From NCBI RefSeq assembly GCF_040938485.1, contig NW_027271646.1:434001-498000 (forward strand): a stretch of 64,000 nucleotides of DNA, given 5' to 3'. This document shows positions 13,052 through 51,551 of this stretch, piece after piece (the first letter of the stretch is position 1; each line of letters begins with the position of its first letter). Both the position numbers and the translations under genes were made by a program. Source of the stretch: Diadema antillarum (taxonomy: Eukaryota). The notes below the pieces were generated by a model, which saw nothing but the letters and a program-made list of their open reading frames with translations, was not told the DNA's origin and made no database searches.

Positions 13052-14383
13052 ATGAACAAGTCGGAAGACATACCATTTGAGTTCACGTGGCGGAATGCCG
13101 CTTTCACGATGCTGGCGTTTGCCTTATGTCTCACCACAACCCTAGCCAACATTATACTCATCGTACTTGTGTGTGTTGATAAAGCACTTCGCCGCTACAA
13201 CAACTACTATGTGGTTAGCCTGGCAATGGCTGACCTGGCTGTGGGTGTGTTCGTTGCACCCATGTTCAGTCTGTACACCATACTGGGCGAGTGGCCGTTG
13301 GGAGAGATTGTCTGTGAGCTGTGGATCTTTGTTGACTTCACGTGCGTGTCGGCGTCCATGTTAGGACTCTGCCTGATTTCTCTCGACCGCTACTGGGCCA
13401 TCACACAGCCTCTGCGACACCTTCGTCGGCAGGGCAGAAGGAGGGCGCTCGCATCAATTGCGGTCGTTTGGGTCATCTCTGCACTTTGCTGGATACCGGC
13501 TATGGCAACATGGAAGGCTGTAGAAGGAAGTTTTGCCAAGGATTCTGAATGCCTATACCTTCCAAGCTTTACTTATGTGATGATTTCGACTGTCGTCGTG
13601 TACGGCGTTCCAATGGTATCCCTTGTCGTGCTGTATGGCCGAATTTACTACACCGTCAGGAACAAAATGCTCCAAGCCGGTCATACAATGAATGTGTCTA
13701 CTCCAGGGCTTGAGGAGAACCCTACAGATAATACAAAGTTGAGGTGTTGTTGTTGTATTGACAAGGGCGTCGACGGTGAGGATGCAACAATAGATAAATC
13801 CGAATCGTCTATAACTACGATATCACAAGGAATTGATTTATCAATGACCACTGCTATCGGTAGTATTGGAGTCGCCGTGACAACTCTGGGAGCCCACTCC
13901 AGTACAAGTGATCTCACACAAACGAAGAACCCTCTCGCAAGGAGAAGCAACCCAACCGACTTTGCGCAAGTCAATAACTGTCTTTCAGTGGATCTCGATA
14001 CTGATCAAAAGCAATCTCTCCCGCCGAAAGCGTCCGTAGCGGATTTGACACCGCGGACTTCGACCTACGCAGCAGGGCTGCAGACGTCACGGCAACTTCG
14101 GGAGCGACTTTCCAGACTCCGTCTGCAGCAGAGGACGTCGAAGACACTAGGAATCATCATTGTCGTGTTCCTCATCTGCTGGATACCGTTCATCGTGCTC
14201 TTTCCCTTGAATTCTTACTGCAGCTGTGTTCCCATCGAAGTGTACGACATGTCCTACTGGCTGGCCTACATCAACTCCGCGATGAACCCTTTCCTGTACG
14301 GATTCAACAGTGACTTCCGGAGAGCCTTTCGCAGAACAATGTGCATAAATTCGCTCGCTACTCGAGTACTGCGAAAGGCGTAA
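13052..14383 (+). CDS. Class A (rhodopsin-like) aminergic GPCR, histamine H1/muscarinic-like, intronless CDS, 443 aa
   Basis: Seven hydrophobic segments; TM2 SLAMADL, C3.25 and D3.32 (CELWIFVD), DRY, TM6 CWIPF, TM7 WLAYINSAMNPFLY, long third intracellular loop, N-terminal NKS glycosylation sequon. Confidence 0.93.
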   Translation: MNKSEDIPFEFTWRNAAFTMLAFALCLTTTLANIILIVLVCVDKALRRYNNYYVVSLAMADLAVGVFVAPMFSLYTILGEWPLGEIVCELWIFVDFTCVSASMLGLCLISLDRYWAITQPLRHLRRQGRRRALASIAVVWVISALCWIPAMATWKAVEGSFAKDSECLYLPSFTYVMISTVVVYGVPMVSLVVLYGRIYYTVRNKMLQAGHTMNVSTPGLEENPTDNTKLRCCCCIDKGVDGEDATIDKSESSITTISQGIDLSMTTAIGSIGVAVTTLGAHSSTSDLTQTKNPLARRSNPTDFAQVNNCLSVDLDTDQKQSLPPKASVADLTPRTSTYAAGLQTSRQLRERLSRLRLQQRTSKTLGIIIVVFLICWIPFIVLFPLNSYCSCVPIEVYDMSYWLAYINSAMNPFLYGFNSDFRRAFRRTMCINSLATRVLRKA

Positions 14384-18526: not shown

Positions 18527-18668
18527 NNNNNNNNNNNNNNNNNNNNNNNNNNNNNNNNNNNNNNNNNNNNNNNNNNNNNNNNNNNNNNNNNNNNNNNNNN
18601 NNNNNNNNNNNNNNNNNNNNNNNNNNNNNNNNNNNNNNNNNNNNNNNNNNNNNNNNNNNNNNNNNNNN
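18527..18668. other. Assembly gap (142 N) hiding the left junction of the retrotransposon composite
   Basis: N run. Sequence resumes 20 nt into the LTR consensus defined by LTR-C. Confidence 0.98.
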
Positions 18669-21600
18669 CAGTCAGTGTTGACCTACAATAACTCGGACTC
18701 AATTAGACAAAATCAATCACCTGGTTCTATTTAATAAGGACTGGGAAAAGAAGGAATGCTCAAAGATATTTTTCTATGTTTCCGTTACAAAAAAAAGGGT
18801 GTCTTTATTACTCCACTTTGTTGCAGTGTCTCGAAATAAACAAAATCCAAACAACTCCGGAATTATAACATTAGACTGAATACAAAGCAAACGAGTTTAA
18901 ACCAACGGTGAGCAACTTATAACAAATTCAAAACAACTAATAACAAAACGTAAACAAACTTAAAGCAACAAAATAAACCCAAAACTACGCGAACGCAACT
19001 ACAAAAGAAAGCAACACCGAAAACAACGTAGTAACAAAAGTTAAAAGCAAGCTTAAACAACAAACTTAAAACAACCTTAACAACGACTCTTAAAAGCAAA
19101 CGCAACACTTAAAGCAACTTTGACAACGAATCTAAAGCAAACGGTTAAAAGTGACTATAACAAAGCAACATTTAAAAATAGCAAGATGCAACGCAACAAG
19201 CAACGAATAACAACGCAACACTGTCCGACGCAGAATACAGCAAATCCGTGTCCCTTTCCCACAGAAGGTCTGACATTACAGCATGCGCAGTGCGCTGGGG
19301 TCCATCCACTTGACAGAAGTCTTGGTGTCTTCTTTGTACAAAGGATGAGGGACGGGACTATGCTACAGCCACAGGAGCAGGTTGATTAAAGTGACGTCCC
19401 TAACAAAAAAGTCCTGTGGTACTCCCTGTGGTACTTGTCGGTACCACACAATGTACCACACACTTGTAATGTTACCACAGGAACTGTGTGGTACTGTACC
19501 ACAGGCTTGTAGGGTACTCCCTGTAGTACTTGTCAGTACCACACAATGTACCACATAAATAAATGTTACCACAGGAACTGTGTGGTACTGTTTTACAGGC
19601 TCATGTGGTACTCCCTGTGGTACTGGTTGGTACCACACAATGTACCACACAAATATATGTTAACACAGGAACTGTGTGGTACTGTGTCACAGGATCGTGT
19701 GGTACTCTGGGATGTACCACAGGGCAGTACCACAGGACATTACCACAGGAAAGTACCACAGAACAGTACCACAAGACAGTATACACACAAATTGTCGTGT
19801 GGTATTTTGGGATGTATACCACACAACAGTACCACAGGACAGTACCACATGAATTGTCCTGTGGTATTTTGGGACGTACCACAGGAGAGTACAACAGGAA
19901 AGTACCACAGGATAGTACCACAGGACAGTACCACACGACTTGTTCTGTGGTATTTTAGGACGTACCACAGGACAGTACCACAGGGCAGTTCCACAGGAAA
20001 GTACCACAGGATAGTACCACAGGACAGTACCACAGGACAGTACCACAGGAATTGTCCTGTGGTATTTTGGGACGTACCACAGGACAGTACCACAGGATAG
20101 TACCACAGGACAGTACCACAGGAAAGTACAACAGGATAGTACCACAGGACAGTACCACACGACTTGTCCTGTGGTATTTTAGGACGTACCACAGGACAGT
20201 ACCACAGGGCAGTACCACAGGACAGTACCACAGGATAGTACCACAGGATAGTACCACAGGACAGTACCACACGACTTGTCCTGTGGTATTTTGGGACGTA
20301 CCACAGGGCAGTACCACAGGACAGTACCACAGGAAAGTACCACAGGATAGTACCACAGGACAGTACCACACGACTCGTCCTGTGGTATTTTAGGACGTAC
20401 CACAGGACAGTACCACAGGGCAGTACCACAGGAAAGTACCACAGGGCAGTACCACAGGAAAGTACCACAGGACAGTACCACACGACTTGTCCTGTGGTAT
20501 TTTGGGACATACCACAGGACAGTACCACAGGAATTGTCCTGTGGTATTTTGGGACATACCACAGGACAGTACCTCACGACTTGTCCTGTGGTATTTTGGG
20601 ACGTACCACAGGACAGTACCACAGGGCAGTACCACAGGACAATACCACAGGGCAGTACCACAGGAAAGTACCACAGGATAGTACCACAGGACAGTACCAC
20701 ACGACTTGTCCTGTGGTATTTTGGGACGTACCACAGGGCAGTACCACAGGACAGTACCACAGGATAGTACCACACGACTTGTCCTGTGGTATTTTGGGAC
20801 GTACCACAGGACAGTACCACAGGATAGTACCACAGGACAGTACCACACGACTTGTCCTGTGGTATTTTGGGACGTACCACAGGACAATACCACAGGAAAG
20901 TACCACAGGATAGTACCACAGGACAGTACCACACGACTTGTCCTGTGGTATTTTGGGACGTACCACAGGACAATACCACAGGAAAGTACCACAGGATAGT
21001 ACCACAGGACAGTACCACATGACTTGTCCTGTGGTATTTTGGGACGTACCACAGGACAGTACCACACGAATTGTCCTGTGGAATTTTGGGACGTACCACA
21101 GGACAGTACGACAGGAATTCCTGTGGTAATTTTCGATGTATACCACAGGAGAGTACCACAGGAACTGTCCAAAATCCCACAGGAAAATCATAATATGGTG
21201 CTATTCCACACAGAAGTACCACACAGCAAATTAAATTCGTAAGTACCACAGAAAAATGCTACAGGATATTCTTTTTTTTCTTAACATTTTATACCAGAGG
21301 ACTATCACATCAGGAGAATATCAAACAGCAGTACCACACAGGAGTACCACACAGGAAAATTGTAAGGCAGAATCAACTGAAATTTATAACAAAAATACAA
21401 ACAAAAAAGCACATATTAATATTCCTCAATCAATTGATAGATGAGTTATGCTGTGAATTATAACAATTGATTTGCCATTACTTATCCTGTCCTATACTCC
21501 TACAGTATTACCTATTTAGTGAAAGTGCTGATGTAAAGCATGAGAAATTTCATAAGGACTTCTGTGGTACTCCTGTGGTACTCCTGTGGTACTCCTGTGG

Positions 21601-22895
21601 TACAAATTTTTACATAGCTCATGAATATTCATAAAAAGCACTCTAGATTTTAGAAAATACATATATGACTTAAAAAGTCAAAGTATTAATGATGGAACTT
21701 ACTTTGAACTTTATGAAAGATTGTCTAATTATGTTATGTTATTCCCAATATCATAGATATTGTTATGAAAGTGTAATTTCATATCTTGATAATAAAGTAT
21801 AATCGAGTTAGTAACCATGCCTTAATGCTTTATGGATAGACGGCCATATATATATGTACTGAGAGGGTCGATGGCTACCTAGGAATAGAATATGACTATA
21901 TAGATCTATATAGGACTAGATTGGCACTTGGCCATTAGACTCTCGTTTGAGGTTATATGTTAGGAGTAGGACAGGTTATTAAGTAGGGCCATGTTTGTCC
22001 TAAAATCCATCACTCACCTATCAGAAATATTCCTTGAAATGTGGCTAAAAGTCTCCAAGATTTTTTTTTTTCGATCTATCCTGTGTGGTACTCTCCTGTG
22101 GTACCATGGAAATGCTGTGTGGTACTGCCCTGTGGTAATGCTGTGTGGTAATGATCGACCTGTGGTACTGTTCTGTGGTACTGTCCCAAAATACCACAGG
22201 ACAGTTCCTGTGGTACTGTTCTGTGGTACTAGTCCTGTGGTACTGCCCTATGGTACGTCCCAAAATACCACAGGAATTCCTGTGGTACTGCCCTGTGGTA
22301 CGTCCCAAAATACCACAGGAATTCCTGTGGTACTGTCCTGTGGTACTGTTCTGTGGTACCGGTCCTGTGGTAATTTCCTGTGGTACTGCCCTGTGGTACG
22401 TCCCAAAATACCACAGGAATTCCTGTGGTACTGTCCTGTGGTATGTCCCAAAATACCACAGGGCAATTCCTGTGGTACTGTCCTGTGGTACTTTCCTGTG
22501 GTACTGTCCTGTGGTACCGTCCTGTGGTAATTACCACAGGAGTACCACAGGACTTTTTCGTAAGGGGTTGCCTGCTTGGACGCCTTCTCAAGAATGATCA
22601 AAGGAGGTGCCCCTTCTGAATAACTTTAGGACACGCTTTCTACCCCTCACAGGGAGATTCCACTTATGGGGGGGGGGTGTTTCCCATGATTATGTAAATT
22701 ACCTCCTGACCTTACACCACCGTGTATGTACCTCTACTATACAACTAGAGTACTGTGATATATCATGCACCTACATGTGTGGATAGAGAATCAAATAGAT
22801 AAACATACATATAAATACTACATAATATATTGAGCGAGTGTAATCATCACAGGAAAGGGGGGGGGGTGAGTGCTGATATTACTGTGACCCTCACA
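18669..22895 (-). repeat. LTR-A (3' LTR of the composite), interrupted at 19398-22566; first 20 nt hidden in the gap
   Basis: Collinear with LTR-C (6 substitutions plus homopolymer length differences by eye); ends ...GACCCTCACA next to the PPT. Confidence 0.92.
19398..22566. mobile_element. 3169-bp non-autonomous CMC/EnSpm-type foldback element with GTACCACAG arrays
   Basis: TIRs CCCTAACAAAAAAGTCCTGTGGTACTC / GAGTACCACAGGACTTTTTCGTAAGGG; 2-bp TSD GT (19396-97, 22567-68). Removing it restores GACGTTGCC as in LTR-B and LTR-C. Arrays of the 9-mer lie in opposite orientation in the two arms. Confidence 0.88.
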
Positions 22896-24698
22896 TTCGC
22901 CACCGTTTAAAACCATTGTTGTCCTCAACAATGTAGATAAGAAAACAACAACATTTAAATTGAGTTTAGTCGAGGTCGTATTTGTTGCACCCTGAGGGAA
23001 GAGGTTGGGCCTCCATATCTTTGGGGAGATCGAACTTGGGTCCACACGAGCAATACTGCCATCCTCTTCACTCGTTACATCTGTACTGTCTTCATCAGCA
23101 TCATCTTCACTTTCACTGCTACCCGGCAAAAATGTGCACGCAGTCAGCATATTCCTGTGAAGAGTCCGCTCTTTGCCTGTGCTGTCCTCTCTGACAGTGT
23201 ATACATCCTGGTCAAGGAGCTTGCGTATCACAGTGTAAGGAGACTCACCCCATTTGTCAGCCAGCTTTTGACGACCTATCAGTGCCTTATGTGCTACGAG
23301 TACCTTATCTTCATGTTCAAAGGGAGCATCCCTGGCTTTCCTGTCATACGTGCCTTTCTGCTTGGCGCGAGCACTTTCGGCATTTTCGTGGGCATTTCGA
23401 TAAGCTTCTTGGAGAGTAAGGCGAAGCTCGTCGACATAGTTGGAGATGGATTTGTCGTCATCTTCCGGGGGTGTGCCGATGAGGTCAAGGGGGATACGTG
23501 GCTCTCTTCCAAACATAAAAAAGAATGGGGAAAACCCTGTTGATGCGTGTTTGGTGCAGTTATATGCGTGGGTGAGAGATTCCACGTGCTCCTTCCAGTT
23601 TGGCTTCTGCGATGGCTCCAGTGTCCCTAACATGTTGAGGAGTGTGCCGATAAACCTCTCCGTCATTCCATTCCCCTGTGGATGATACGGCGTTGTCCTG
23701 CTCTTTTGTATGTGAAGTAGTTCACATAACTCGCGTACTAGAGCTGCCTCAAAACACCTGCCTTGATCACTATGGATGCGTTCAGGTATGCCATAGTGAA
23801 CTATGTACCTGCTCCACAAAGTCCTAGCCACTGTTTGAGCAGACTGGTCTCTAGTAGGAAAAGCTTGGGCGTGGCGAGTAAAGTGATCCGTGACCACCAG
23901 GACATTCTCTATACCTCCCCGTGACGTCTCTAAGCTAAGGAAATCGATACATACCAGTTCAAGTGGTCTGCTTGACTTGATGGGTTGAAGTGGGGCCTTG
24001 GACTTTGCTTCTGTCGTCTTCCGGACAGTGCATCTTCGACACCTCTGGATGTACTGCTGGACTATCGTCTTCATGCCAGGTAAATAGAATCTGTCTTGCA
24101 TGAGAGCCAAAGTCTTCTCAAGCCCAAGATGACCCATTTCAACGTGTGCCCTACGGAGGGCCAGCTTCCTCAGACCTTTAGGCAGAACGAGTAGTCTACG
24201 ATCTCCTCTACTATACCACAGTACGCCATTCTCGCACACGTGCAGTCTATCCCACTGTCGAAGCAGCAAGCGAGCAACGATTGCTTCCTTTCGCAACTGA
24301 CGTGAGGCTGGTCTCTGTCCGGCTTGAAGGAGCTCGACGACTCGGCTGATAATGACGTCCTCTCTCTGCAGCTGTGCAAGCTCTTCCACATTTACGCCTG
24401 CCAACAAAGTAGATGAGCCATCATCGTGTTGCTCTGCAGGTGTAACATTAATGTTGTGGCTGGCTGCCGCCTGATGCAAGGGTGAGTCATCCTTCGTTTG
24501 CTCTGCTGCTGTATTGACTGGCACGTCTAATGCTTGTTTCACATCTGAAGAAGGGGTCCGAGACACCTCAGGCTCCTCCTCACCAGTGTTATTCCCCGTT
24601 GTCACCTGCGTCTGGTAGCTTGTTCCAGTTGTGCCAGGGCTACATTGGTTGAATGTACCCACAGACTGCCCCTCGTCTGCAGGTCGAACTAGTTTAAA
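22818..24698 (-). CDS. pol: Internally deleted pol: protease-leader stub fused in frame to an intact-looking integrase; C-terminus frameshifted into LTR-A
   Basis: HHCC (AHVEMGH...CRRC) and DDE (CIDF, HSDQG, TERF) are present. No DTG, YLDD or TDAS motif. The junction GEE-EPEVSRTP aligns to GEE and EDSLSRIP of the full pol. Confidence 0.88.
   Translation of the reverse strand, partial: FKLVRPADEGQSVGTFNQCSPGTTGTSYQTQVTTGNNTGEEEPEVSRTPSSDVKQALDVPVNTAAEQTKDDSPLHQAAASHNINVTPAEQHDDGSSTLLAGVNVEELAQLQREDVIISRVVELLQAGQRPASRQLRKEAIVARLLLRQWDRLHVCENGVLWYSRGDRRLLVLPKGLRKLALRRAHVEMGHLGLEKTLALMQDRFYLPGMKTIVQQYIQRCRRCTVRKTTEAKSKAPLQPIKSSRPLELVCIDFLSLETSRGGIENVLVVTDHFTRHAQAFPTRDQSAQTVARTLWSRYIVHYGIPERIHSDQGRCFEAALVRELCELLHIQKSRTTPYHPQGNGMTERFIGTLLNMLGTLEPSQKPNWKEHVESLTHAYNCTKHASTGFSPFFFMFGREPRIPLDLIGTPPEDDDKSISNYVDELRLTLQEAYRNAHENAESARAKQKGTYDRKARDAPFEHEDKVLVAHKALIGRQKLADKWGESPYTVIRKLLDQDVYTVREDSTGKERTLHRNMLTACTFLPGSSESEDDADEDSTDVTSEEDGSIARVDPSSISPKIWRPNLFPQGATNTTSTKLNLNVVVFLSTLLRTTMVLNGGECEGHSNISTHPPPFPVMITLAQYIM
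22896..22908 (-). other. Polypurine tract of the deleted unit
   Basis: Minus strand AAACGGTGGCGAA directly abutting the LTR start TGTGAGGG; identical at 26990-27002. Confidence 0.7.
24636..24698 (-). other. -1 ribosomal frameshift signal (UUUAAAC plus predicted pseudoknot), deleted unit
   Basis: T TTA AAC in gag frame immediately before TAG; the -1 frame reads FKLVRP. Stem ACCTGCAGAC/GTCTGTGGGT; loop GGGGC can pair with downstream GCCCT. Confidence 0.8.
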
Positions 24699-25789
24699 GG
24701 ATGCTGAGGTCCACGGAAGCCTTGCGAGTTTTGTCGATCGGGACAAGTCCGTGAATAGTGGCCAGGCTGTCCACAGGTATAGCAAGCGTTGCTATGTTGT
24801 GGTTGCCTACCACCTCTTCCTCTCCCTCTCCGACTGCCACCTTGGGAGGTCCATGGTTGCTGCAACCTACTCTCAAATTCCGCGAGCCTCCTCTGCTGGT
24901 CTTCCATCACCCTATGGAAGAGTGCCATATGCTGTTGCTGTGTGGAGGCCAGCTCTTGGATACTCCAGGTGAGTTGCTCTATCGTCTGTGCATCCTTCGA
25001 GGCCTCCTTCACATCTTGCCGGTATACCTGAGCCGTGGTCAGACGATCCTCTGATGCAATTACGTGCAGTTCCCATCTAAGTTCTCGGAATGTCATCTCC
25101 CTCGGCCTCATAGGAGCTAGACGAGCCTTGACCTTCTGGTCCCTTAAGCCGAACATGAATTGCGTAGTAAGCATAGCGTCCCGCACAGGCTTTTCAACCA
25201 TGGCCGCTTGGTCACCCTTATCTCGTGCGACCCTCAACCTTGCCTCCAGTGCGACGGCGTACTCGGATGGAGTTTCGCTGGCCTGCTGAGTTCGGGCGTA
25301 GAAGCTTGCCATGGGTGACGTCGTCCAGTCGCGGTCCCCATACTCGTCGAGAAGCTCTCTGAAAGCCAGCGCAGGCGTCATCTCCTCGTCACCACGGAGC
25401 TCCAAGTTCAGGATGAGGTCCCGCGCTCTTCCCCCTGTGTGCCTAACAATTTCATTGAACTGCATTTGTGGTGGCATTGAGCCCTTAGATTCTATGAAAT
25501 ACTTCATATCACGCACCCAATCCTCTACTTTTACTCCCCCCTTACCTGTGAAGACATTGACACCCTTGACTTGATGTGACACCACGAGCCTCGGCGTAAT
25601 GAACTGGTCTTGTCTCTGTGTCGGCTCAGGAACGGGGTCAAATCCTGCCATCTGAAGCGGGGTCACAGCTGGCCTTGGGTACTGCCACGTAGCTGAAGTC
25701 ATCGGGTCCGGCGTCGACGTCGCTCTCGGCATGCTGCGGGGATCGTCCGCTGGAGTTCTCACATCACTCGGTGGAATGGGAGAGGCCAT
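24689..25789 (-). CDS. gag: Gypsy Gag (366 aa) with capsid-like region and CCHC zinc knuckle, deleted unit
   Basis: Open ORF, CYTCGQPGHYSRTC knuckle, lies between PBS and pol; paralogue of 31092-32192. Confidence 0.92.
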   Translation of the reverse strand: MASPIPPSDVRTPADDPRSMPRATSTPDPMTSATWQYPRPAVTPLQMAGFDPVPEPTQRQDQFITPRLVVSHQVKGVNVFTGKGGVKVEDWVRDMKYFIESKGSMPPQMQFNEIVRHTGGRARDLILNLELRGDEEMTPALAFRELLDEYGDRDWTTSPMASFYARTQQASETPSEYAVALEARLRVARDKGDQAAMVEKPVRDAMLTTQFMFGLRDQKVKARLAPMRPREMTFRELRWELHVIASEDRLTTAQVYRQDVKEASKDAQTIEQLTWSIQELASTQQQHMALFHRVMEDQQRRLAEFESRLQQPWTSQGGSRRGRGRGGRQPQHSNACYTCGQPGHYSRTCPDRQNSQGFRGPQHPLN

Positions 25790-25894: not shown

Positions 25895-25912
25895 TTCCGG
25901 GTTTCGGCACCA
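25895..25912 (-). other. Primer-binding site, tRNA-Phe (17/18 match)
   Basis: Plus strand TTCCGGGTTTCGGCACCA versus the tRNA-Phe 3' end TCCCGGGTTTCGGCACCA (recalled); 6 nt from the LTR-B end. Confidence 0.85.
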
Positions 25913-25918
25913 AAATTA

Positions 25919-26989
25919 TGTGACCGGCTGGACACGTCCAGTCAGTGTTGACCTACAATAGCTCAGACTCAATTAGACAAAATCAATCACCTGGTTCTAT
26001 TTAATAAGGACTGGGAAAAGAAGGAATGCTCAAAATTATGTGACCGGCTGGACACGTCCAGTCAGTGTTGACCTACAATAGCTCAGACTCAATTAGACAA
26101 AATCAATCACCTGGTTCTGTTTAATAAGGACTGGGAAAAGAAGGAATGCTCAAAGATATTTTTTCTGTATTTCCGTTACAAAAAAAAAGGTGTCTTTATT
26201 ACTTCACTTTGTTGCAGTATTTCAAACTAAGCCAAAACTCAAATAACTCCAAAATTGTAACATTAGACTGAACACAAAGCAAACGAATTTAAAACAACGA
26301 AAAGCAACTTATAGCAAATTAAAAACAACTAATAACAAAACAACACTAAAAGCAAATTTAAAACAACGTAAAGGCAGCACTGAAATAAACTACCAAAAAG
26401 GCAACGCAAAAGCAACGAATAACAAAAGTTAAAAGCAAACTGAAACAACGGAAATCAACGGTTAAAGAATAACAAGAGGCAACGCAACACTGTCCGACGC
26501 AGAATACAGCAAGTCCGTGTCCCTTTCCCACAGAAGCTCTGACATTACAGCATGTGCAGTGCGCTGGGGTCCATCCACTTGACAGAAGTCTTGGTGTCTT
26601 CTTTGTACAAAGGATGAGGGACGGGACTATGCTACAGCCACAGGAGCAGGTTGATTAAAGTGACGTTGCCTGCTTGGACGCCTTCTCAAGAATGATCAAA
26701 GGAGGTGCCCCTTCTGAATAACTTTAGGACACGCTTTACCCCTCACAGGGAGATTCCACTTATGGGGGGGGTGTTTCCCATGATTATGTAAATTACCTCC
26801 TGACCTTACACCACCGTGTATGTACCTCTACTATACAACTAGAGTACTGTGATATATCATGCACCTACATGTGTGGATAGAGAATCAAATAGATAAACAT
26901 ACATATAAATACTACATAATATAATGAGTGAGTGTAATCATCACAGGAAAGGGGGGGGGGTGAGTGCTGATATTACTGTGACCCTCACA
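25919..26989 (-). repeat. LTR-B (shared middle LTR, mosaic, with 120-bp duplication)
   Basis: TGTGACC...CTCACA termini. The right part is nearly identical to LTR-A/C; the left part is divergent and shorter. Confidence 0.92.
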
Positions 26990-27048: not shown

Positions 27049-30000
27049 TTAAATTGAATTTAGTCGAGGTCGTATTTGTTGCACCCTGAGGGAAGAGGTT
27101 GGGCCTCCATATCTTTGGGGAGATCGTCGTGTTCTCGATGAGCGCCGCTGACGATTTGCATCGACTTCACTGCGCTTCTTCCCTGGAGGATGACTCGAAC
27201 TTGGGTCCACATGAGCAATACTGACATCCTCTTCACTCGATACATCTGTACTGTCTTCATCAGCATCGTCTTCACTTTCACTGCTACCCGGCAAAAATGT
27301 GCACGCAGTCAGCATATTCCTGTGAAGAGTCCGCTCTCTGCCTGTACTGTCCTCTCTGACAGTGTAGACATCCTGGTCTGGCAGCCTGCGTATCACGGTG
27401 TACGGGGACTCACCCCATTTGTCAGCCAGCTTTTGACGACCTATCAGTGCCTTATGTGCTACGAGTACCTTATCTCCATGTTCAAAGGGAGCATCCTGGG
27501 CTTTCTTGTCATATGTGCCTTTCTGCTTGGCTCGAGCACTTTCGGCATTTTCCTGGGCGTTTTGATAAGCCTCTTGGAGAGTGTGGCGAAGCTCGTCGAC
27601 ATAGTTCAGAATGGGTTTGTCGTCATCTTCCGGAGGTGTGCCGATGAGGTCAAGGGGGATACGTGGCTCTCTTCCAAACATCAAAAAGAATGGGGAAAAC
27701 CCTGTTGATGCGTGTTTGGTGCAATTATATGCGTGGGTGAGAGACTCAACGTGCTCCTTCCAGTTCGGCTTCTGCGATGGCTCCAGTGTTCCTAGCATAT
27801 TAAGGAGTGTACCATTGAAACGTTCGGTCATTCCATTCCCCTGTGGGTGATACGGCGTTGTCCTGCTCTTTTGTATGTGAAGTAGTTCACATAACTCGCG
27901 TACTAGAGCTGCCTCAAAACACCTGCCTTGATCACTATGGATGCGTTCAGGTATGCCATAGTGAACTATGTACCTGCTCCACAAAGTCCTAGCCACTGTT
28001 TGAGCAGACTGGTCTCTAGTAGGAAAAGCTTGGGCGTGGCGAGTAAAGTGATCCGTGACCACCAGAACATTCTCTATGCCTCCCCGTGATGTCTCCAAAC
28101 TAAGGAAATCGATACATACCAGTTCAAGTGGCCTGCTTGACTTAATGGGTTGAAGTGGAGCCTTGGACTTTGCTTCTGTCGTCTTCCGGACAGTGCATCT
28201 TCGACACCTCTGGATGTACTGCTGGACGATCGTCTTCATGCCAGGTAAGTAGAATCTGTCTTGCATGAGTGCCAAAGTCTTGTCAAGTCCAAGATGACCC
28301 ATTTCAACATGTGCCCTACGGAGAGCCAGCTTCCTCAGACCTTTAGGCAGAACGAGTAGTCTACGATCTCCTCTACTATACCACAGTACGCCATCCTCGC
28401 ACACATGCAGTCTATCCCACTGTCGAAGCAGCAAGCGAGCAACGATTGCTTCCTTTCGCAACTGACGTGAGGCTGGTCTCTGTCCGGCTTGAAGGAGCTC
28501 GACGACTCGGCTGATAATGACGTCCTCTCTCTGCAGCTGTGCAAGCTCTTCCACATCTACGCCTGCTAACAATGTAGATGAGCCATCATCTTGTTGCTCT
28601 GCAGGTGTGACATTAACGTTGTGACTGGCTGCCGCCTGATGCAAGGGTGAGTCATCCTTCGTTTGCTCTTTTGTGGTACCCAGGGACATGTCTAGAGTGT
28701 GCTGTACTTCTGAGGAGGGGATTCGAGACAAGCTATCCTCGTTCTCGTTGGATTTCCCAGACCTGTATTCAATGTGCAAATCACATTGCGCCAAGTCACT
28801 CACCCATCGCTGCCCATGTGCATCGAGTTTCGCCTTCCCCAGAATGTAAGTTAACGGATTGTTGTCCGTTACCGCTGTGACTTTCCTGCCATAGACATAG
28901 TCGCGAAATTTCACTGTTGCTGCCCAGTGGAGGGCCTTGAACTCGAGCTTATGTGCTGGATATCTAACCTCCCCTGGTGAAAGACTTCGACTGGCGTAGG
29001 CCACTACCCTCTCCTTACCATCTTGTATTTGAGCAAGCACGGCTCCCAGTCCATCGAGAGAGGCGTCTGTCTGTAGGATGAAGGGGGACTCGAAATCGGG
29101 GTAAGCGAGAACGGGGGCAGAAATCATCAGTCTCTTCAAGGACTCGAATGCAGCCTGGCAGTCGCTGGTCCAGACATCTGTAACTGGAGCTCGCTTCCCA
29201 GTTCCATTTTTGCCTCCAACCAGGGAGAACAGCGGTCTGGCGATCTTCGCATAGTCCTTGATAAACCTGCGATAGTACCCTGTAAAGCCAAGAAAACTTC
29301 GTACCTCCCTCTTGTTCTTGGGTACCGGCCAGTCTCGGACAGACTCAATTTTCTCAGGGTCGGTTGCCACTCCATGCTCAGACACCACGTGACCAAGATA
29401 CTTCACTTCTTTCCTGAGGATGTGGCACTTACTGGGTTTGAGCTTTAACCCATGCTCTCTCAGGCGTGAGAAGACACGTTCCAGCCTGCTTAGATGTTCT
29501 TGTAACGTCGAACTGAATATGATGACGTCATCTAGATAGATAAGTACCTCACTCAGATTCATGTCTCCGAACACCGTGCTCATCAGGCGCTGAAAAGTGG
29601 CCGGTGCATTCATCAGGCCGAACGGCATCCTCGTGTACTCAAACAAGCCCATCGGTGTGGTAAACGCCGTCTTCCGCTGGTCCTGTTCGGCCACCTGCAC
29701 CTGTAAGTAACCCGCCATCAAGTCAAGACTGGTGAAGAACTTGGCCTTGCTGAGAGCATCTAGTGATTCATCAATTCTTGGAAGAGGGAAAGCGTCACGG
29801 ATGGTGCGAGTATTAAGCTTTCTGTAATCGACACATAGACGAATCTTCCCATCCTTCTTCCGCACAATGACAATAGGGGACGCAAATGGGCTCTTACTTG
29901 GCTTGATGATGCCAGCAGACTGGAGCTCGCTCAGGTGGTCCTTTACCTCTTTGAAGTCCGATGGTGCAATTCGTCTGTATGGCATTCGGAATGGTGTCGG

Positions 30001-31101
30001 GTCTATGAGGGGGATGTCGTGTACGATAGTGTTGGTACAGCCGAAGTCTTCTGGCCCCTGGGAGAAGACATCTGCGTTCTTTCGTAGCAGTCCTTGTAGT
30101 GCATCCAATTCAGAAGGAGTTAACTCTCCCGTGGGTAAGTCCAGCTCCGGGGGCAGCGAACTAACATCTTGATGCAAAACATTTGTAGCAGTGTGCGGGG
30201 AAGTTAACTCCTTGCTTTTGTTATTGGAAGCCTCTGTCGTCCACGGTGAGTCTTGCACTAGACTGCCAACTTCCAACCTCGCAATTGGCTGGTTCCTACG
30301 CAGGGTCACTGGTTGTGTCGACCTGTTAGTGACAACCAATTTTAGGTCACCATCTGCAACAGGAGTGAAGGCTGATTCAACGCTTATTCTCCCTAACTTG
30401 TTGCATTCACCAACCATGGCCATAAACAAGCGATTATGGGTGTGCCTCGGAGCTCTTGCAGAGACTTGGACGTATTCACCGGGGTTGACGAGAAATGGCT
30501 TCCTGCTCTTGAGTCTTGCGACTCCGACATCTCCCGACCGGTCAGCGAGATCCAAACCATCGCAGTTTAGTGCCTGGAATGCATTAAAGCAAGCGGACGA
30601 CACAGGCTTTACTTTTTCCATGAAGTTACGTCCGTACTTTGAGTGTAGGCGATCCCGAGAAGCACGCAAAGCATTAGTCCCAAGCAGACACGATATGTGG
30701 CCTCCCTTTCCGATCGCAGGGACTACCAAAGCTGGGACCGACTTCACCTCTATCCCCATAATTTCAATATCCAGCGAAATAAAACCTCTATGAGGGACTT
30801 CCTGCCCGTTCGCGCCCTCTATCCTAATCTCAGTCGGCTTAATGTCCTGCTTGCTGAGGTAGGGATGTCGAGCCACATAATCGGAGGTGATGGTCGTAAC
30901 TTGTGACCCCGTATCCAAAATCGCCTCGCACTCCTGGCCATGAACGATAATCGTCGTGTGGTTGACTGGGCCCACGAGCTCCTCACCAGTTTCATTTCCT
31001 CTTTTCACCTGTGTCTCGTAGTTGGTTCTCTTCCTACCAGGGCTGCACTGGTTAAATGAACCCACAGATTGCCCCTCATCTGCAGGTTGGGCTAGTTTAA
31101 A
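27049..31101 (-). CDS. pol: Gypsy Pol polyprotein (PR, RT, RNase H, integrase), uninterrupted, expressed by -1 frameshift from gag
   Basis: ILDTGS (PR), LCVDYRKLN and YLDD (RT), TDAS (RNase H), HHCC and DDE (IN) in one open frame. Confidence 0.96.
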   Translation of the reverse strand, partial: FKLAQPADEGQSVGSFNQCSPGRKRTNYETQVKRGNETGEELVGPVNHTTIIVHGQECEAILDTGSQVTTITSDYVARHPYLSKQDIKPTEIRIEGANGQEVPHRGFISLDIEIMGIEVKSVPALVVPAIGKGGHISCLLGTNALRASRDRLHSKYGRNFMEKVKPVSSACFNAFQALNCDGLDLADRSGDVGVARLKSRKPFLVNPGEYVQVSARAPRHTHNRLFMAMVGECNKLGRISVESAFTPVADGDLKLVVTNRSTQPVTLRRNQPIARLEVGSLVQDSPWTTEASNNKSKELTSPHTATNVLHQDVSSLPPELDLPTGELTPSELDALQGLLRKNADVFSQGPEDFGCTNTIVHDIPLIDPTPFRMPYRRIAPSDFKEVKDHLSELQSAGIIKPSKSPFASPIVIVRKKDGKIRLCVDYRKLNTRTIRDAFPLPRIDESLDALSKAKFFTSLDLMAGYLQVQVAEQDQRKTAFTTPMGLFEYTRMPFGLMNAPATFQRLMSTVFGDMNLSEVLIYLDDVIIFSSTLQEHLSRLERVFSRLREHGLKLKPSKCHILRKEVKYLGHVVSEHGVATDPEKIESVRDWPVPKNKREVRSFLGFTGYYRRFIKDYAKIARPLFSLVGGKNGTGKRAPVTDVWTSDCQAAFESLKRLMISAPVLAYPDFESPFILQTDASLDGLGAVLAQIQDGKERVVAYASRSLSPGEVRYPAHKLEFKALHWAATVKFRDYVYGRKVTAVTDNNPLTYILGKAKLDAHGQRWVSDLAQCDLHIEYRSGKSNENEDSLSRIPSSEVQHTLDMSLGTTKEQTKDDSPLHQAAASHNVNVTPAEQQDDGSSTLLAGVDVEELAQLQREDVIISRVVELLQAGQRPASRQLRKEAIVARLLLRQWDRLHVCEDGVLWYSRGDRRLLVLPKGLRKLALRRAHVEMGHLGLDKTLALMQDRFYLPGMKTIVQQYIQRCRRCTVRKTTEAKSKAPLQPIKSSRPLELVCIDFLSLETSRGGIENVLVVTDHFTRHAQAFPTRDQSAQTVARTLWSRYIVHYGIPERIHSDQGRCFEAALVRELCELLHIQKSRTTPYHPQGNGMTERFNGTLLNMLGTLEPSQKPNWKEHVESLTHAYNCTKHASTGFSPFFLMFGREPRIPLDLIGTPPEDDDKPILNYVDELRHTLQEAYQNAQENAESARAKQKGTYDKKAQDAPFEHGDKVLVAHKALIGRQKLADKWGESPYTVIRRLPDQDVYTVREDSTGRERTLHRNMLTACTFLPGSSESEDDADEDSTDVSSEEDVSIAHVDPSSSHPPGKKRSEVDANRQRRSSRTRRSPQRYGGPTSSLRVQQIRPRLNSI
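31039..31101 (-). other. -1 ribosomal frameshift signal (UUUAAAC plus predicted pseudoknot), full-length unit
   Basis: T TTA AAC TAG, 6-nt spacer, 11-bp stem AACCTGCAGAT/ATCTGTGGGTT, loop GAGGGGCA complementary to downstream GCCCT. Confidence 0.82.
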
Positions 31102-32192
31102 GGCTGCTGCTGCTGCGGTCCACGGGAACCCTGCGAGTTCTGTCGATTTGGACATGACCGTGCAAAGTGTCCCGGCTGTCCACATGTGTAGCACGCATCG
31201 CTCCGCCGTGGTTGCCTGCCACCTCTTCCTTCCCAACTGCCGCCTTGAGGGGTCCATGGTTGCTGCATCCGGCTCTCAAATTCAGCCAGCCTCCTCCGCT
31301 GGTCCTCCATAGCCTTATGGAACAGGTCCATCTGCTGTTGCTGAGTAGAGGCCAGTTCCTGCATACTCCTCGTCAGCTGCTCTATTATCTGCGTCTCCCT
31401 CGACGCCTCCTTCACATCCTGCCTATACACTTGGGCAGATGCTAGACGCTCCTCAGACTCTATTACATGCAGTTCCCGTCGCAGCTCTCGAAATGTCATC
31501 TCTCTCGGCCTCATCGGGGCTAGACGAGCCTTGACCTTCTGGTCCCTCAAGCCGAACATGAATTGGGTCGTAAGCATGGCGTCCCGCACAGGCTTTTCAA
31601 TCATGGCCGCTTGATCACCCTTATCTCGTGCGATCCTCAGCTTTGCCTCCAGTGCGACGGCGTACTCGGATGGAGTTTCGCTGGCCTGCTGAGTTCGGGC
31701 ATAGAAGCTTGCCATGGGTGACGTCGTCCACTCGCGGTCCCCATACTCGTCGAGAAGCTCTCGAAAAGCCAGCGCAGGCGTCATCTCCTCGTCACCACGG
31801 AGCTCCAAATTCAGGATGAGGTCCCTCGCTCTTCCCCCTGTATGCCTAACAATTTCATTGAACTGCATTTGTGGTGGCATTGGGCCCTTAGATTCTATGA
31901 AATACTTCATATCACGCACCCAATCTTCTACTTTTACTCCCCCCTTACCTGTAAAGACATTGACACCCTTGACTTGATATGACACCACGAGCCTCGGCGT
32001 AATGAACTGGTCCTGTCTCTGTGTCGGCTCAGGAACGGGGTCAAATCCTGCCATCTGGAGCGGGGTTACAGCTGGCCTTGGATACTGCCACGTAGCTGAA
32101 GTCATCTGGTCCGGCGTCGACGTCGCTCTCGGCATGCTGCGGGGATCGTCCGCTGGAGTTCTCACATCACTCGGTGGAATGGGAGAGGCCAT
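31092..32192 (-). CDS. gag: Gypsy Gag (366 aa) with CCHC zinc knuckle, full-length unit
   Basis: CYTCGQPGHFARSC knuckle; overlaps pol in the -1 frame. Confidence 0.93.
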   Translation of the reverse strand: MASPIPPSDVRTPADDPRSMPRATSTPDQMTSATWQYPRPAVTPLQMAGFDPVPEPTQRQDQFITPRLVVSYQVKGVNVFTGKGGVKVEDWVRDMKYFIESKGPMPPQMQFNEIVRHTGGRARDLILNLELRGDEEMTPALAFRELLDEYGDREWTTSPMASFYARTQQASETPSEYAVALEAKLRIARDKGDQAAMIEKPVRDAMLTTQFMFGLRDQKVKARLAPMRPREMTFRELRRELHVIESEERLASAQVYRQDVKEASRETQIIEQLTRSMQELASTQQQQMDLFHKAMEDQRRRLAEFESRMQQPWTPQGGSWEGRGGRQPRRSDACYTCGQPGHFARSCPNRQNSQGSRGPQQQQPLN

Positions 32193-32297: not shown

Positions 32298-32315
32298 TCC
32301 CGGGTTTCGGCACCA
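32298..32315 (-). other. Primer-binding site, tRNA-Phe (18/18 match)
   Basis: Plus strand TCCCGGGTTTCGGCACCA equals the recalled tRNA-Phe 3' end including CCA. Confidence 0.88.
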
Positions 32316-32321
32316 AAATTA

Positions 32322-33401
32322 TGTGACCGGCTGGACACGTCCAGTCAGTGTTGACCTACAATAACTCGGACTCAATTAGACAAAATCAATCACCTGGTTC
32401 TATTTAATAAGGACTGGGAAAAGAAGGAATGCTCAAAGATATTTTTTCTATGTTTCCGTTACAAAAAAAAGGGTGTCTTTATTACTCCACTTTGTTGCAG
32501 TGTCTCGAAATAAACACAATCCAAACAACTCCGGAATTATAACATTAGACTGAACACAAAGCAAACGAGTTTAAACCAACGGTGAGCAACTTATAACAAA
32601 TTCAAAACAACTAATAACAAAACGTAAACAAACTTAAAGCAACAAAATAAACCCAAAACTACGCGAACGCAACTACAAAAGAAAGCAACACCGAAAACAA
32701 CGTAGTAACAAAAGTTAAAAGCAAGCTTAAACAACAAACTTAAAACAACCTTAACAACGACTCTCAAAAGCAAACGCAACACTTAAAGCAACTTTGACAA
32801 CGAATCTAAAGCAAACGGTTAAAAGTGACTATAACAAAGCAACATTTAAAAATAGCAAGATGCAACGCAACAAGCAACGAATAACAACGCAACACTGTCC
32901 GACGCAGAATACAGCAAATCCGTGTCCCTTTCCCACAGAAGCTCTGACATTACAGCATGTGCAGTGCGCTGGGGTCCATCCACTTGACAGAAGTCTTGGT
33001 GTCTTCTTTGTACAAAGGATGAGGGACGGGACTATGCTACAGCCACAGGAGCAGGTTGATTAAAGTGACGTTGCCTGCTTGGACGCCTTCTCAAGAATGA
33101 TCAAAGGAGGTGCCCCTTCTGAATAACTTTAGGACACGCTTTCTACCCCTCACAGGGAGATTCCACTTATGGGGGGGGGGGTGTTTCCCATGATTATGTA
33201 AATTACCTCCTGACCTTACACCACCGTGTATGTACCTCTACTATACAACTAGAGTACTGTGATATATCATGCACCTACATGTGTGGATAGAGAATCAAAT
33301 AGATAAACATACATATAAATACTACATAATATATTGAGAGAGTGTAATCATCACAGGAAAGGGGGGGGGGGGTGAGTGCTGATATTACTGTGACCCTCAC
33401 A
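32322..33401 (-). repeat. LTR-C (5' LTR of the composite, 1080 bp)
   Basis: TGTGA...TCACA inverted termini, adjacent to the PBS, flanked on the right by (TA)n. Confidence 0.95.
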
Positions 33402-33471
33402 TATATATATATATATATATATATATACTATAGTAATATAGTAATATAGTAATATAGTAATATAGTAATAT
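33402..33471. repeat. (TA)n followed by (TAGTAATA)n, flanking LTR-C
   Basis: Direct reading of the sequence. Confidence 0.9.
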
Positions 33472-33859
33472 TATTGGACATTTCCCCAAAATACTATCAT
33501 TCAGAGCGACTTCCTTGGGTTTCTAATAAATGCTAATGCAATAAGTAATAAAAATGGAGAAAAAAATACACAAACACAGCAAACTAAATATGATAAAATT
33601 TCTAAAGCTCCATTTTCCATTCTGATTAAATGCTTCAGGCACGACCAAACAATCATCTTTAACATTGATTAAAGTTAATAATCTTTAATATAGGGCCTAC
33701 GTCATCAATCAACATCTTCAACAAGCATGGTGAGGAGGAAACTCAAGGTGGTATAGTTTCTGTCATTTTTCCGCCTCTTGAAAACACGAAACAACAAACC
33801 AAAATGAAATCCGTAAACTTTATTGTTCTATACCTCCAACACATATTTTATATAGGCGC

Positions 33860-39487: not shown

Positions 39488-40014
39488 ATATCCCATGGTA
39501 TTTCTTCCAACGTGGACAATGGTTTCTCTTCAACATTTACGCTACGTCAAGCATCCTTATTTCTGTCTTGTACTGGGGCGCCATCCACGTTCCCGGGGCT
39601 GTCGGTCTGTACTACGACATCAACTTCCACCTCTTGAACGGACTTGTGGCGTTGGTCGAAATCTTTTTGACGGCAACGGTGGTGCGTGTGCTGCATTTCA
39701 TCTACCCATTCTGTCTCGGCGTCGCCTTCGTCGCATTCTCGGGTATCTACTGGGCGGCGATGGGCACGGATGAAGAGGGCAATCGATACATCTACCCGAT
39801 ACTCGATTACTCGGACAGGGCAGCACTGGCCTCAGGAGCAGCTGTCGGAGCCTGCTTCGCGGTAATTTTGATTCACGTATTGGTGGTCTGGGGATTCCAC
39901 AAGCTCAAGCTACTTTTGGTCTCTAAACTGTGTTCATCGTGCTCGCCAAATGTTAGGGCAGATTCAGACGTCGGACAAGAGATGGCTGCTAGCAACTCCT
40001 CCAACAATGCTTAA
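39488..40014 (+). CDS. rost-like: Rolling stone-like protein A, exon 3
   Basis: CTCGCAG acceptor. The frame continues DIPWYFFQRGQWFLFN...YWG...NFHLLN...YIYPILDY to TAA. Confidence 0.9.
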
Positions 40015-41560: not shown

Positions 41561-41703
41561 NNNNNNNNNNNNNNNNNNNNNNNNNNNNNNNNNNNNNNNN
41601 NNNNNNNNNNNNNNNNNNNNNNNNNNNNNNNNNNNNNNNNNNNNNNNNNNNNNNNNNNNNNNNNNNNNNNNNNNNNNNNNNNNNNNNNNNNNNNNNNNNN
41701 NNN
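41561..41703. other. Assembly gap (143 N)
   Basis: N run. Confidence 0.98.
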
Positions 41704-51036: not shown

Positions 51037-51551
51037 TCAACATGGTGAATCAGCCATCAGTCCCTGTACCATGCCTTCCTTCTCGTCGCCTCCCGTCTTC
51101 AGGTCGGGATGCATCCCGCATTTGCCTGCGAGCCAGATCCTCAGTTTGTAGAACCCGTACATCATGGCTTGCAGCACCAGGAGCGAGAGGATCATCCCAA
51201 GGGATACTCCTCCGGCTGTACCCGGTTCGTTGCCGTAGTCTAAGAAGGGCCAGATATACGGCTTGCCCTCGGAATTGGTCCCGCCGCACGCCCAGTATAT
51301 GACGGCAAAGAAGTCGAAGATGAGATCGAAGGCGATCGGGTAGATGAAGTGCCAGAAGCGCACGGGCGTTGCGGTGATGAAGAGCTCGACGAAGCTGAGG
51401 ATCATGGTGAGGATGTGGACATTGAGCTCGGAGAGGTCCGTACTCTGGGGAGAGGTGTAGAGCGTGGTCCAGTAGATGATGGTGACCAGGATCGACATGG
51501 GTACCGTGGTGTTGAAGAGGAACCACTGGATCTTGTAACTCAACGGGGTCT
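51037..51551 (-). CDS. rost-like: Rolling stone-like protein B, exon 3; complement join(60620-60721,52150-52474,51037-51551), 313 aa
   Basis: CACGACAG acceptor; KIQWFLFN, IYW, NVHILT, YIWPFLDY motifs parallel paralogue A. Confidence 0.9.

What the first reader, a model, noticed from the sequence alone, without database searches (positions are those of the whole stretch)
22818..25789. Candidate satellite retrotransposon: Gag plus frameshift plus integrase only, apparently an old lineage maintained beside its helper
Seen: relative to the neighbouring full pol, about 2.24 kb (PR, RT, RNase H; about 28740-30980) is missing in frame, while gag, the frameshift signal, the HHCC zinc finger and all three DDE residues remain open. 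Divergence from the helper is concentrated around the junction (Gag C-terminal third, pol leader, first 25 or so residues after the junction: EPEVSRTPSSDVKQALDVPVNTAA versus EDSLSRIPSSEVQHTLDMSLGTTK), while the Gag N-terminus and integrase core are nearly identical. Inference: this is not a fresh deletion. It looks like a long-lived non-autonomous lineage under selection to make Gag and a Gag-IN fusion, borrowing PR and RT in trans and homogenised by recombination away from the junction. It could be a parasite, a defective-interfering element or a cooperative partner. I do not recall this configuration being described in animals, but cannot check that.
Basis: partly seen in the sequence, partly recalled or inferred. 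Interest (0 to 1): 0.8.

Follow-up and report, generated by a model that had tools for sequence, protein, structure and literature searches.

The report
Deleted retrotransposon joined to intact partner
A Ty3/gypsy retrotransposon copy that has lost protease, reverse transcriptase and RNase H sits in a head-to-tail pair with an intact copy, sharing one LTR; this is a known kind of defective element in a known kind of arrangement, and no evidence could be obtained here that it forms an old, selected lineage.

Summary
On the minus strand a short unit (A: gag 25789..24689, pol 24698..22818) lacks 2,238 bp, exactly 746 codons, that the neighbouring full unit (B) has at 30978..28741. Gag, a conserved -1 frameshift site, the HHCC finger and the DDE residues remain.

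Three points change the picture.
- A and B are not separate insertions. They form LTR-B-LTR-A-LTR with one shared middle LTR. The outer LTRs are 99.6% alike, and the middle LTR is a chimera. This is the pattern left by homology-driven joining, as in Ty5 and Tf1/Tf2 tandems.
- A differs from B as a sharp mosaic (57-100% identity, dS from 0 to about 1), so it is not a fresh deletion of its neighbour. It comes from a different recombinant source.
- A's integrase looks relaxed. It departs at 3 of 37 family-invariant positions, including the Asn three residues after the catalytic Glu. A 71-nt deletion also frameshifts away a conserved C-terminal tail. B departs at none.

Whether other copies carry this junction could not be tested, because the closest relative in any searchable collection is only 68% identical.

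Verdict: a non-autonomous deletion derivative in a heterotypic tandem; a new member of known kinds.

The parts
32322..33401 (-). LTR3, the 5' LTR of full unit B (TG...CA, 1,080 bp)
   Evidence: Ends read. It differs from LTR1 at only 4 of about 1,060 aligned sites.
32298..32315 (-). Primer-binding site of B, 18 nt, 6 nt after the LTR
   Evidence: Read. From memory it is the complement of the 3' end of tRNA-Phe; this was not checked with a tool.
31092..32192 (-). gag of B (366 aa, CCHC knuckle)
27049..31101 (-). pol of B (PR-RT-RNase H-IN), entered by -1 frameshift at 31101..31095
   Evidence: Pfam domains. B conforms at all 87 invariant PR-RT-RH columns and all 37 invariant IN columns.
25919..26989 (-). 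LTR2, the single LTR shared by B (as its 3' LTR) and A (as its 5' LTR); a chimera
   Evidence: The first 486 alignment columns match LTR3 and LTR1. From column 487 onward there are 80 sites where LTR2 alone differs, plus indels of 48 and 71 nt.
25915..26154 (-). 120-bp tandem duplication of the 3' end of LTR2; the first copy includes the first 2 nt of the PBS
25895..25912 (-). Primer-binding site of A (one mismatch to B's, at position 17)
24689..25789 (-). gag of A (366 aa, open, CCHC present)
   Evidence: Against B, dN/dS is 0.13.
24657..24698 (-). -1 frameshift module of A: heptamer 24698..24692, TAG 24691..24689, hairpin 24684..24657
22818..24698 (-). Truncated pol of A: 41-codon leader, deletion junction, integrase, and an out-of-frame tail that runs into LTR1
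24575..24576 (-). Deletion junction (B 30978..28741 is missing; GAG microhomology). The 3' side falls inside the conserved C-terminal motif of RNase H. The junction can be placed only to within about 12 nt.
24505..24575 (-). Stretch of about 70 nt after the junction, 57% identical to B, then an abrupt switch to 95%
23649..23651 (-). Ile codon where all 120 relatives and B have Asn, three residues after the catalytic Glu
23033..23034 (-). Site of the 71-nt deletion (B 27197..27127, CGA microhomology) that frameshifts the integrase C-terminal tail
22567..22895 (-). LTR1, first part (3' LTR of A)
18669..19397 (-). LTR1, second part; it runs into the N stretch at 18527-18668, so its end and any target-site duplication cannot be read
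19398..22566 (.). 3.17-kb foldback-like insertion that splits LTR1 (not part of the retrotransposon)
   Evidence: 28-nt terminal inverted repeats, a 2-bp GT duplication, and arrays of a 13-nt unit in opposite orientation

Best explanation
The locus is a heterotypic tandem of two Ty3/gypsy units on the minus strand, LTR3-B-LTR2-A-LTR1. B is a young, apparently intact, autonomous provirus. A is an internally deleted, non-autonomous relative. It lost PR, RT and RNase H in one 2,238-bp in-frame deletion with 3-nt microhomology, the kind of deletion template switching by reverse transcriptase produces. A descends from a recombinant source different from B, with segments of a lineage that is far removed at synonymous sites spliced into B-like sequence. 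A most likely reached this position through homologous recombination between an A-type LTR and the 3' LTR of the resident B, not through integrase-mediated insertion next to B. The incoming A could have been a cDNA, an LTR circle or an ectopic copy. One exchange between LTR alignment columns 463 and 487 explains both the chimeric middle LTR and the near-identity of the outer pair. A keeps every cis signal needed to be copied in trans: LTR ends, PBS, the region before the 3' LTR, and a 5' UTR 97-98% identical to B's. It can encode Gag and, by -1 frameshifting, a Gag-leader-integrase fusion. Its integrase part shows relaxed constraint, so catalytic integrase is probably not what keeps the ORF open. 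Shown: the anatomy, the mosaic, the LTR pattern, the replacements at invariant positions. Inferred: template-switch origin of the deletion, the recombination route, copying in trans.
For: Shared LTR and three LTR copies. Three-way LTR comparison: LTR3 and LTR1 differ at 4 sites; LTR2 alone differs at 80 sites, 79 of them from column 487 onward; two of the three sites where LTR1 alone differs lie at columns 445 and 463, just before that point. Mosaic: with dS by window. Purifying selection along the A-B path: gag dN/dS 0.13, IN 0.18. Microhomology at both deletions. Relaxed integrase: 3 of 37 invariant columns replaced in A, 0 in B; conserved basic tail lost. With an outer-LTR divergence of 0.4%, only about 3 substitutions are expected in A's integrase since arrival, so most of this damage predates the locus. 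B intact at 87 + 37 invariant columns. Precedents: Tf1 lacking integrase inserts at resident Tf2 by Rad52 annealing and gives tandems separated by one LTR, and natural Tf1-Tf2 hybrid tandems exist (PMC11042837). Shared-LTR tandems are known in Drosophila and plants (PMC5932611, PMC11899658). A 68%-identical relative also lies in a head-to-tail array with a period of about 6.06 kb.
Against: The end of LTR1 lies in an N stretch, so a target-site duplication flanking the whole array could not be checked. The same LTR pattern would arise if an assembler had threaded an A-type element from another locus through the identical U3 sequence. The two LTR1-specific sites near the proposed crossover could be later mutations. 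Nothing shows that A was ever transcribed, packaged or reverse-transcribed. The excess of A-lineage replacements is not significant in number (14 versus 8, p = 0.29); the argument rests on where the integrase replacements fall.
Confidence: 0.6

Rival explanations
1. A represents an old, multi-copy Gag-plus-integrase satellite lineage that is packaged with its helper. Recombination with the helper homogenises sequence far from the deletion, while sequence linked to the junction stays divergent. Selection keeps gag and the Gag-IN fusion open.
For: The junction lies inside the most divergent coding block, 79% then 57% identity, with dS 0.6-1 on both sides. Both ORFs are open. The frameshift module is intact and conserved. 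All cis signals match B. Damage to the integrase that predates this locus means the source was already defective yet still gave rise to this copy.
Against: No second copy of the junction could be found or even looked for in the right genome. Three invariant integrase residues and the conserved tail are lost, which argues against selection on the integrase part. Divergent blocks also occur away from the junction, in the LTR middle and in IN codons 301-330 after the junction, so the block around the junction may be one patch among several. About a third of the unit is divergent, so the junction could fall in such a patch by chance. Low dN/dS between A and B is equally expected if the divergence arose in full-length ancestors.
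Confidence: 0.17
2. The tandem is an assembly artefact. A is a real deleted element located elsewhere, and the assembler joined it into B's 3' LTR through the roughly 490 nt of near-identical U3 sequence and back out again.
For: The window contains N stretches, one of them directly at the end of LTR1. A false loop through a repeat gives the same reciprocal LTR pattern as a real crossover.
Against: If the sites at columns 445 and 463 mark A-type sequence, the return join would have to fall within 23 nt. A foldback-like insertion lies inside LTR1 with clean ends. A related element in another assembly is also tandem. Such tandems are common in nature (PMC5932611, PMC11899658, PMC11042837).
Confidence: 0.13
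3. Origin in place: unequal exchange duplicated B, and one copy later suffered the deletion and diverged at this locus.
For: Unequal exchange between the LTRs of one element is the textbook route to shared-LTR tandems (PMC5932611).
Against: The internal regions differ by up to 43% in places and dS reaches about 1, yet dN/dS is 0.1-0.2 and there are no stops in gag. Meanwhile the outer LTRs differ by 0.4%. Neutral decay in place cannot produce this.
Confidence: 0.03

Closest known systems
Mouse IAP 1-delta-1 elements (PMC6466679)
   Same: An LTR retroelement with an in-frame internal deletion of about 2 kb that fuses gag-side and pol-side coding sequence. It is non-autonomous, depends on full-length relatives, and keeps an open fusion ORF.
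   Different: The IAP deletion removes part of gag and part of pol, and the form is a proven multi-copy, currently mobile subtype whose fusion protein acts in cis. Here gag is whole, PR-RT-RNase H are gone, integrase remains, and only one copy is known.
Tf1/Tf2 hybrid tandems and Ty5 cDNA recombination (PMC11042837, which cites Ke and Voytas 1997)
   Same: Two related but different Ty3/gypsy-type units separated by a single LTR, with sequence switching within the LTR. The arrangement arises through homology, not integrase.
   Different: Those cases were shown by experiment in yeasts. Here the route is inferred from LTR site patterns in an animal genome, and the incoming unit appears to lie downstream of the resident rather than upstream.
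Plant autonomous/non-autonomous pairs that keep gag (RLG_Cereba/RLG_Quinta, Sabrina, WHAM; PMC11302176, PMC9744471)
   Same: The non-autonomous partner keeps matching LTR ends and PBS and an intact gag, and exchanges sequence with the autonomous partner by template switching.
   Different: Those partners lack integrase as well and are established families with many copies, dated over millions of years.
Shared-LTR tandem LTR retrotransposons in Drosophila and plants (PMC5932611, PMC11899658)
   Same: Alternating LTR and internal regions, seen especially for gypsy elements.
   Different: Most described tandems repeat the same unit. Here the two units differ by a large deletion and by a mosaic of divergence.

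Membership tests
Ty3/gypsy (Metaviridae) LTR retrotransposon | Direct LTRs that begin with TG and end with CA, followed by a tRNA primer-binding site | tested here: met
   The assignment of the PBS to tRNA-Phe is from memory.
Ty3/gypsy (Metaviridae) LTR retrotransposon | pol domain order PR-RT-RNase H-IN | tested here: met
   Met for B. A keeps only IN, in the position expected after loss of the first three domains.
Ty3/gypsy (Metaviridae) LTR retrotransposon | Target-site duplication flanking the insertion | not testable with these tools
   The end of LTR1 lies in the N stretch 18527-18668.
Established non-autonomous LTR-retrotransposon lineage (as IAP 1-delta-1, Quinta, ETn) | Lacks enzymes needed for its own replication | tested here: met
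   No PR, RT or RNase H in A.
Established non-autonomous LTR-retrotransposon lineage (as IAP 1-delta-1, Quinta, ETn) | LTR termini, PBS and the region before the 3' LTR match an autonomous partner | tested here: met
   The PBS matches at 17 of 18 positions.
Established non-autonomous LTR-retrotransposon lineage (as IAP 1-delta-1, Quinta, ETn) | Several independent copies that share the same deletion, each with its own LTR pair and target-site duplication | not testable with these tools
   No other copy in the window. No collection holds this species' elements; the best relative is 68% identical.
Established non-autonomous LTR-retrotransposon lineage (as IAP 1-delta-1, Quinta, ETn) | Purifying selection on the retained ORFs after the deletion | tested here: inconclusive
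   Pairwise dN/dS is 0.13-0.18 but cannot be dated relative to the deletion. The integrase shows replacements at invariant positions. For gag, A-lineage versus B-lineage replacements are 9 versus 3, not significant.
Shared-LTR tandem made by homologous recombination | Two internal regions separated by exactly one LTR, with no host sequence between them | tested here: met
Shared-LTR tandem made by homologous recombination | Site patterns in the LTRs consistent with an exchange | tested here: met
   The outer LTRs match and the middle LTR is chimeric, with its breakpoint at columns 463-487.
Shared-LTR tandem made by homologous recombination | The structure is confirmed on single molecules | not testable with these tools
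   No reads are available.
Programmed -1 ribosomal frameshift between gag and pol | X_XXY_YYZ heptamer in the gag frame at the overlap, and pol in the -1 frame | tested here: met
   U_UUA_AAC is followed by TAG. The frame offset was computed from the ORF coordinates.
Programmed -1 ribosomal frameshift between gag and pol | Downstream structure supported by covariation | tested here: met
   A 10-bp hairpin lies after a 7-nt spacer. 4 of 10 pairs change on both sides across six elements. The energy of the whole 111-nt stretch is not unusual.
Catalytically competent retroviral-type integrase | HHCC finger and D,D,35E | tested here: met
Catalytically competent retroviral-type integrase | Conformity at positions invariant across the family, and presence of the conserved C-terminal tail | tested here: not met
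   A departs at 3 of 37 invariant columns and loses the tail through a frameshift.

The most novel reading that the evidence does not exclude
A is one member of a long-lived Gag-plus-integrase satellite lineage of an invertebrate Ty3/gypsy element. The lineage would be co-packaged with its helper, and its sequence would be overwritten by the helper everywhere except in a block held in linkage with the deletion junction. It could also spread by homology-driven entry at the helper's own LTRs, so it would not need a working integrase.
Probability: 0.15. Interest if true: 0.6.

Novelty: new member of a known kind. Interest (0 to 1): 0.3.

Why it matters
If the structure is real, it is a clean natural example in an animal genome of two things so far shown mainly in yeast and plants. 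One is entry of a defective LTR element at a relative's LTR by homology. The other is sequence exchange between an autonomous element and a defective partner. It also gives a concrete junction sequence with which the question 'single accident or parasitic lineage' can be settled in an afternoon once the genome is at hand. As it stands, it is a well-preserved but ordinary defective copy.

Tried and rejected
Searches for the junction or close copies:
- Word search of A's pol restricted to residues 30-150: nothing.
- A 200-residue piece across the junction: nothing.
- Exact look-up of all four ORF products: absent.
- Metagenome contigs: one hit at 34% identity.
- Prokaryote genome contigs: nothing.
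- The 26-nt junction string in viral contigs: nothing.

These blanks say little. The best full-length relative anywhere is only 68% identical, so this species' elements are simply not in the collections.

The exhaustive protein search with A's pol gave no protein aligned across the leader and the junction. The integrase-only hits I followed were not Gag-IN elements:
- P0020 is a frameshifted full element.
- P0121, P0124, P0128 and P0143 begin inside RNase H.
- P0165 is a full pol that the gene caller split at a scaffold gap.
- P0123 lies on a 1.9-kb fragment.

Other tests:
- CpG-decay asymmetry between A and B: none, 18 versus 16.
- Relative-rate counts of replacements: not significant.
- The bacterial promoter and terminator scan of the LTR is irrelevant to a eukaryotic element.
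- A first large alignment timed out and was redone on trimmed sequences.
- Origin in place and a fresh deletion of B were rejected on the dS mosaic.
- No literature hit for a natural Gag-integrase element under four phrasings.


Full report
ANATOMY. Two gag-pol units lie head to tail on the minus strand.
- Unit B has gag at 32192..31092 and a 1402-aa pol ORF at 31257..27049. Pfam finds protease, reverse transcriptase, RNase H, integrase zinc finger and integrase core in it.
- Unit A has a gag of the same length at 25789..24689. Its pol-frame ORF at 24785..22818 gives only the integrase zinc finger and core.
- In both units the gag frame ends in the heptamer U_UUA_AAC followed directly by TAG, and pol is in the -1 frame.
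- Seven nucleotides downstream sits a 10-bp hairpin. It is kept in A, B and four relatives from other assemblies, and four of its ten pairs change on both sides.
- Each internal region starts with an 18-nt primer-binding site a few bases after an LTR that ends in CA. From memory this site is the complement of the 3' end of tRNA-Phe.
The family is Ty3/gypsy. The host is an animal: the window also holds an intronless aminergic receptor gene and rolling-stone family exons. The CpG ratio of about 0.85 in the flanks looks invertebrate-like.

THE DELETION. Global alignment of the two units shows one gap of 2,238 nt in A, between A 24576 and 24575, opposite B 30978..28741. This is 746 codons, so the reading frame is kept. 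Both donor sides end in GAG. On the 5' side the break lies seven codons before the protease. On the 3' side it falls inside the conserved motif that closes RNase H. Because the next 12 nt align poorly, the junction can be placed only to within about four codons. A second deletion of 71 nt, again with 3-nt microhomology, lies near the 3' end of A's pol (B 27197..27127). It shifts the frame, so A's ORF loses the basic tail that B shares with its three closest relatives and instead runs 77 nt into the LTR.

THE TWO UNITS SHARE AN LTR. Self-comparison finds three LTR copies, not four.
- LTR3 is at 33401..32322.
- LTR2 is at 26989..25919.
- LTR1 is split into 22895..22567 and 19397..18669 by a 3.17-kb foldback-like insertion, and it runs into an N stretch.
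LTR2 is at once the 3' LTR of B and the 5' LTR of A. In a three-way alignment LTR3 and LTR1 differ at 4 of about 1,060 sites. LTR2 alone differs at 80 sites, and all but one of them lie from column 487 onward. Two of the three sites where LTR1 alone differs lie at columns 445 and 463, just before that point.

One exchange between columns 463 and 487 reproduces the whole pattern. The partners would be the 3' LTR of a resident B provirus and the LTR of an incoming A-type molecule. This is the outcome described for Ty5 cDNA, and for Tf1 when integration is blocked, where tandems are separated by a single LTR and natural Tf1-Tf2 hybrids occur (PMC11042837). Shared-LTR tandems are also common in Drosophila and plants (PMC5932611, PMC11899658). 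A 68%-identical relative from another assembly also sits in a head-to-tail array with a period of about 6.06 kb. So the position of A 'beside its helper' is explained by homology and does not need selection.

I cannot exclude that an assembler produced the same path through the near-identical U3 sequence. Single-molecule reads would settle this.

A IS A MOSAIC RELATIVE TO B. Identity along the unit falls into eight blocks (0 of 200 permutations reach the contrast):
- 99.4% for the first half of the LTR;
- 75, 40 and 84% for the LTR middle;
- 96.3% for the LTR end, the 5' UTR and gag up to about codon 233;
- 79.0% for the rest of gag and the pol leader;
- 57.4% for the roughly 70 nt after the junction;
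- 95.3% for the integrase and the 3' end.
The contrast holds at synonymous sites. dS is 0.03-0.16 in gag codons 1-200 against 0.6 to saturation in codons 201-366. It is 0.68 in the leader and 0.76 in the first 30 codons after the junction. Within the integrase it ranges from 0 to 1.07. dN/dS is 0.13 for gag and 0.18 for the integrase.

The outer LTRs differ by only 0.4%, so this divergence cannot have arisen at this locus. The low dN/dS does not show selection after the deletion, because it would look the same if the divergence had accumulated in full-length ancestors.

IS THE INTEGRASE STILL UNDER CONSTRAINT? I aligned A and B with 120 relatives. Among 37 columns that are at least 99% invariant, A departs at three and B at none.
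- One is the Asn three residues after the catalytic Glu, which is Ile in A. By position this is the counterpart of Asn155 of HIV-1 integrase; that equivalence is my inference.
- The other two are a Leu and a Gly.
With 0.4% LTR divergence, about three substitutions are expected in A's integrase since it arrived, so three hits on invariant columns most likely predate the locus. Together with the lost tail, this argues against selection for a working integrase. It is compatible either with a defective source copy or with a lineage that no longer needs its own integrase.

In gag, replacements polarised with three outgroup gags are 9 on A's side and 3 on B's (p = 0.15). These include two changes from a basic residue to Trp at conserved basic positions. 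B conforms at all 87 invariant columns of PR-RT-RNase H as well and is a credible helper.

COPY NUMBER, THE DECISIVE POINT, COULD NOT BE ADDRESSED. The window holds no further copy. None of the ORF products is in the protein collection. Searches across the junction found nothing. Contig collections gave only one match at 34% identity. The closest full-length relative is 68% identical, so this species' own elements are absent from everything I could search. The exhaustive search found no protein that aligns from the leader through the junction. The integrase-only hits I followed were fragments, frameshifted full elements or a pol split at a scaffold gap. I did not fill or look up any N stretch.

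COMPARISON WITH WHAT IS KNOWN. In-frame, internally deleted, helper-dependent LTR elements that encode a fusion protein are established in animals: mouse IAP 1-delta-1 (PMC6466679). Non-autonomous partners that keep gag and exchange sequence with the autonomous partner are established in plants (PMC11302176). I found no described natural element that keeps gag and integrase but lacks PR-RT-RNase H. The particular set of retained domains may therefore be unreported, but with one copy and a decaying integrase this is weak ground for a new category.

VERDICT. The best reading is a non-autonomous deletion derivative of a recombinant sub-lineage, joined to an intact relative by LTR homology.

Noticed in passing
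window 19398-22566: A 3.17-kb non-coding insertion splits LTR1. It has 28-nt terminal inverted repeats that begin CCCTAAC (2 mismatches) and a 2-bp GT duplication of the target. Long arrays built on a 13-nt unit (GTACCACAGGAxA) run in opposite orientation at the two ends. It looks like a foldback-type DNA element; its superfamily was not determined.
   Followed up: partly
window 25915-26154: A 120-bp tandem duplication of the last part of the shared LTR. The first copy carries the first two bases of the primer-binding site, which suggests an error of reverse transcription in an ancestor of unit A.
   Followed up: partly
L003 (ENA ERZ26222911, contig ctg936814_7x_c) 1-16002: The closest relative (68% identical in the integrase region) also lies in a head-to-tail array of gag-pol units, with a period of about 6.06 kb (one spacing is 7.25 kb). 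The contig name ends in _c, which may mean the assembler called it circular.
   Followed up: partly
window 24657-24698 and 31060-31101; L002-L005: The frameshift hairpin is conserved across six elements, with compensatory changes. Three relatives have GUCAAAC instead of the canonical UUUAAAC heptamer, which would allow slippage of one tRNA only.
   Followed up: partly
window 13052-14383 (+): Intronless 443-aa rhodopsin-family receptor. Its best matches among solved structures are 5-HT1 and muscarinic receptors. It is probably a host aminergic receptor gene.
   Followed up: partly
window 39568-40014 (+) and 51037-51585 (-): Two ORFs match the C-terminal half of the 'rolling stone' (Rost) family, on opposite strands. 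They are probably exons of two host paralogues.
   Followed up: no
window 18527-18668 and 41561-41703: There are two N stretches of almost equal length (142 and 143). The first removes the end of LTR1 and with it the flanking target-site duplication. They were left as they are.
   Followed up: no
window 33402-33475: An (AT)n run and a (TATTAC)n microsatellite abut the outer end of LTR3. Similar microsatellites occur at about 1910, 18280, 38100, 52570 and 62930.
   Followed up: no
window 26188-26488 versus 32471-32893: The divergent middle of the LTR is a T/G-rich, degenerate short-repeat region. LTR2 lacks 48 + 71 nt there, so part of the low identity may come from slippage rather than age.
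   Followed up: no
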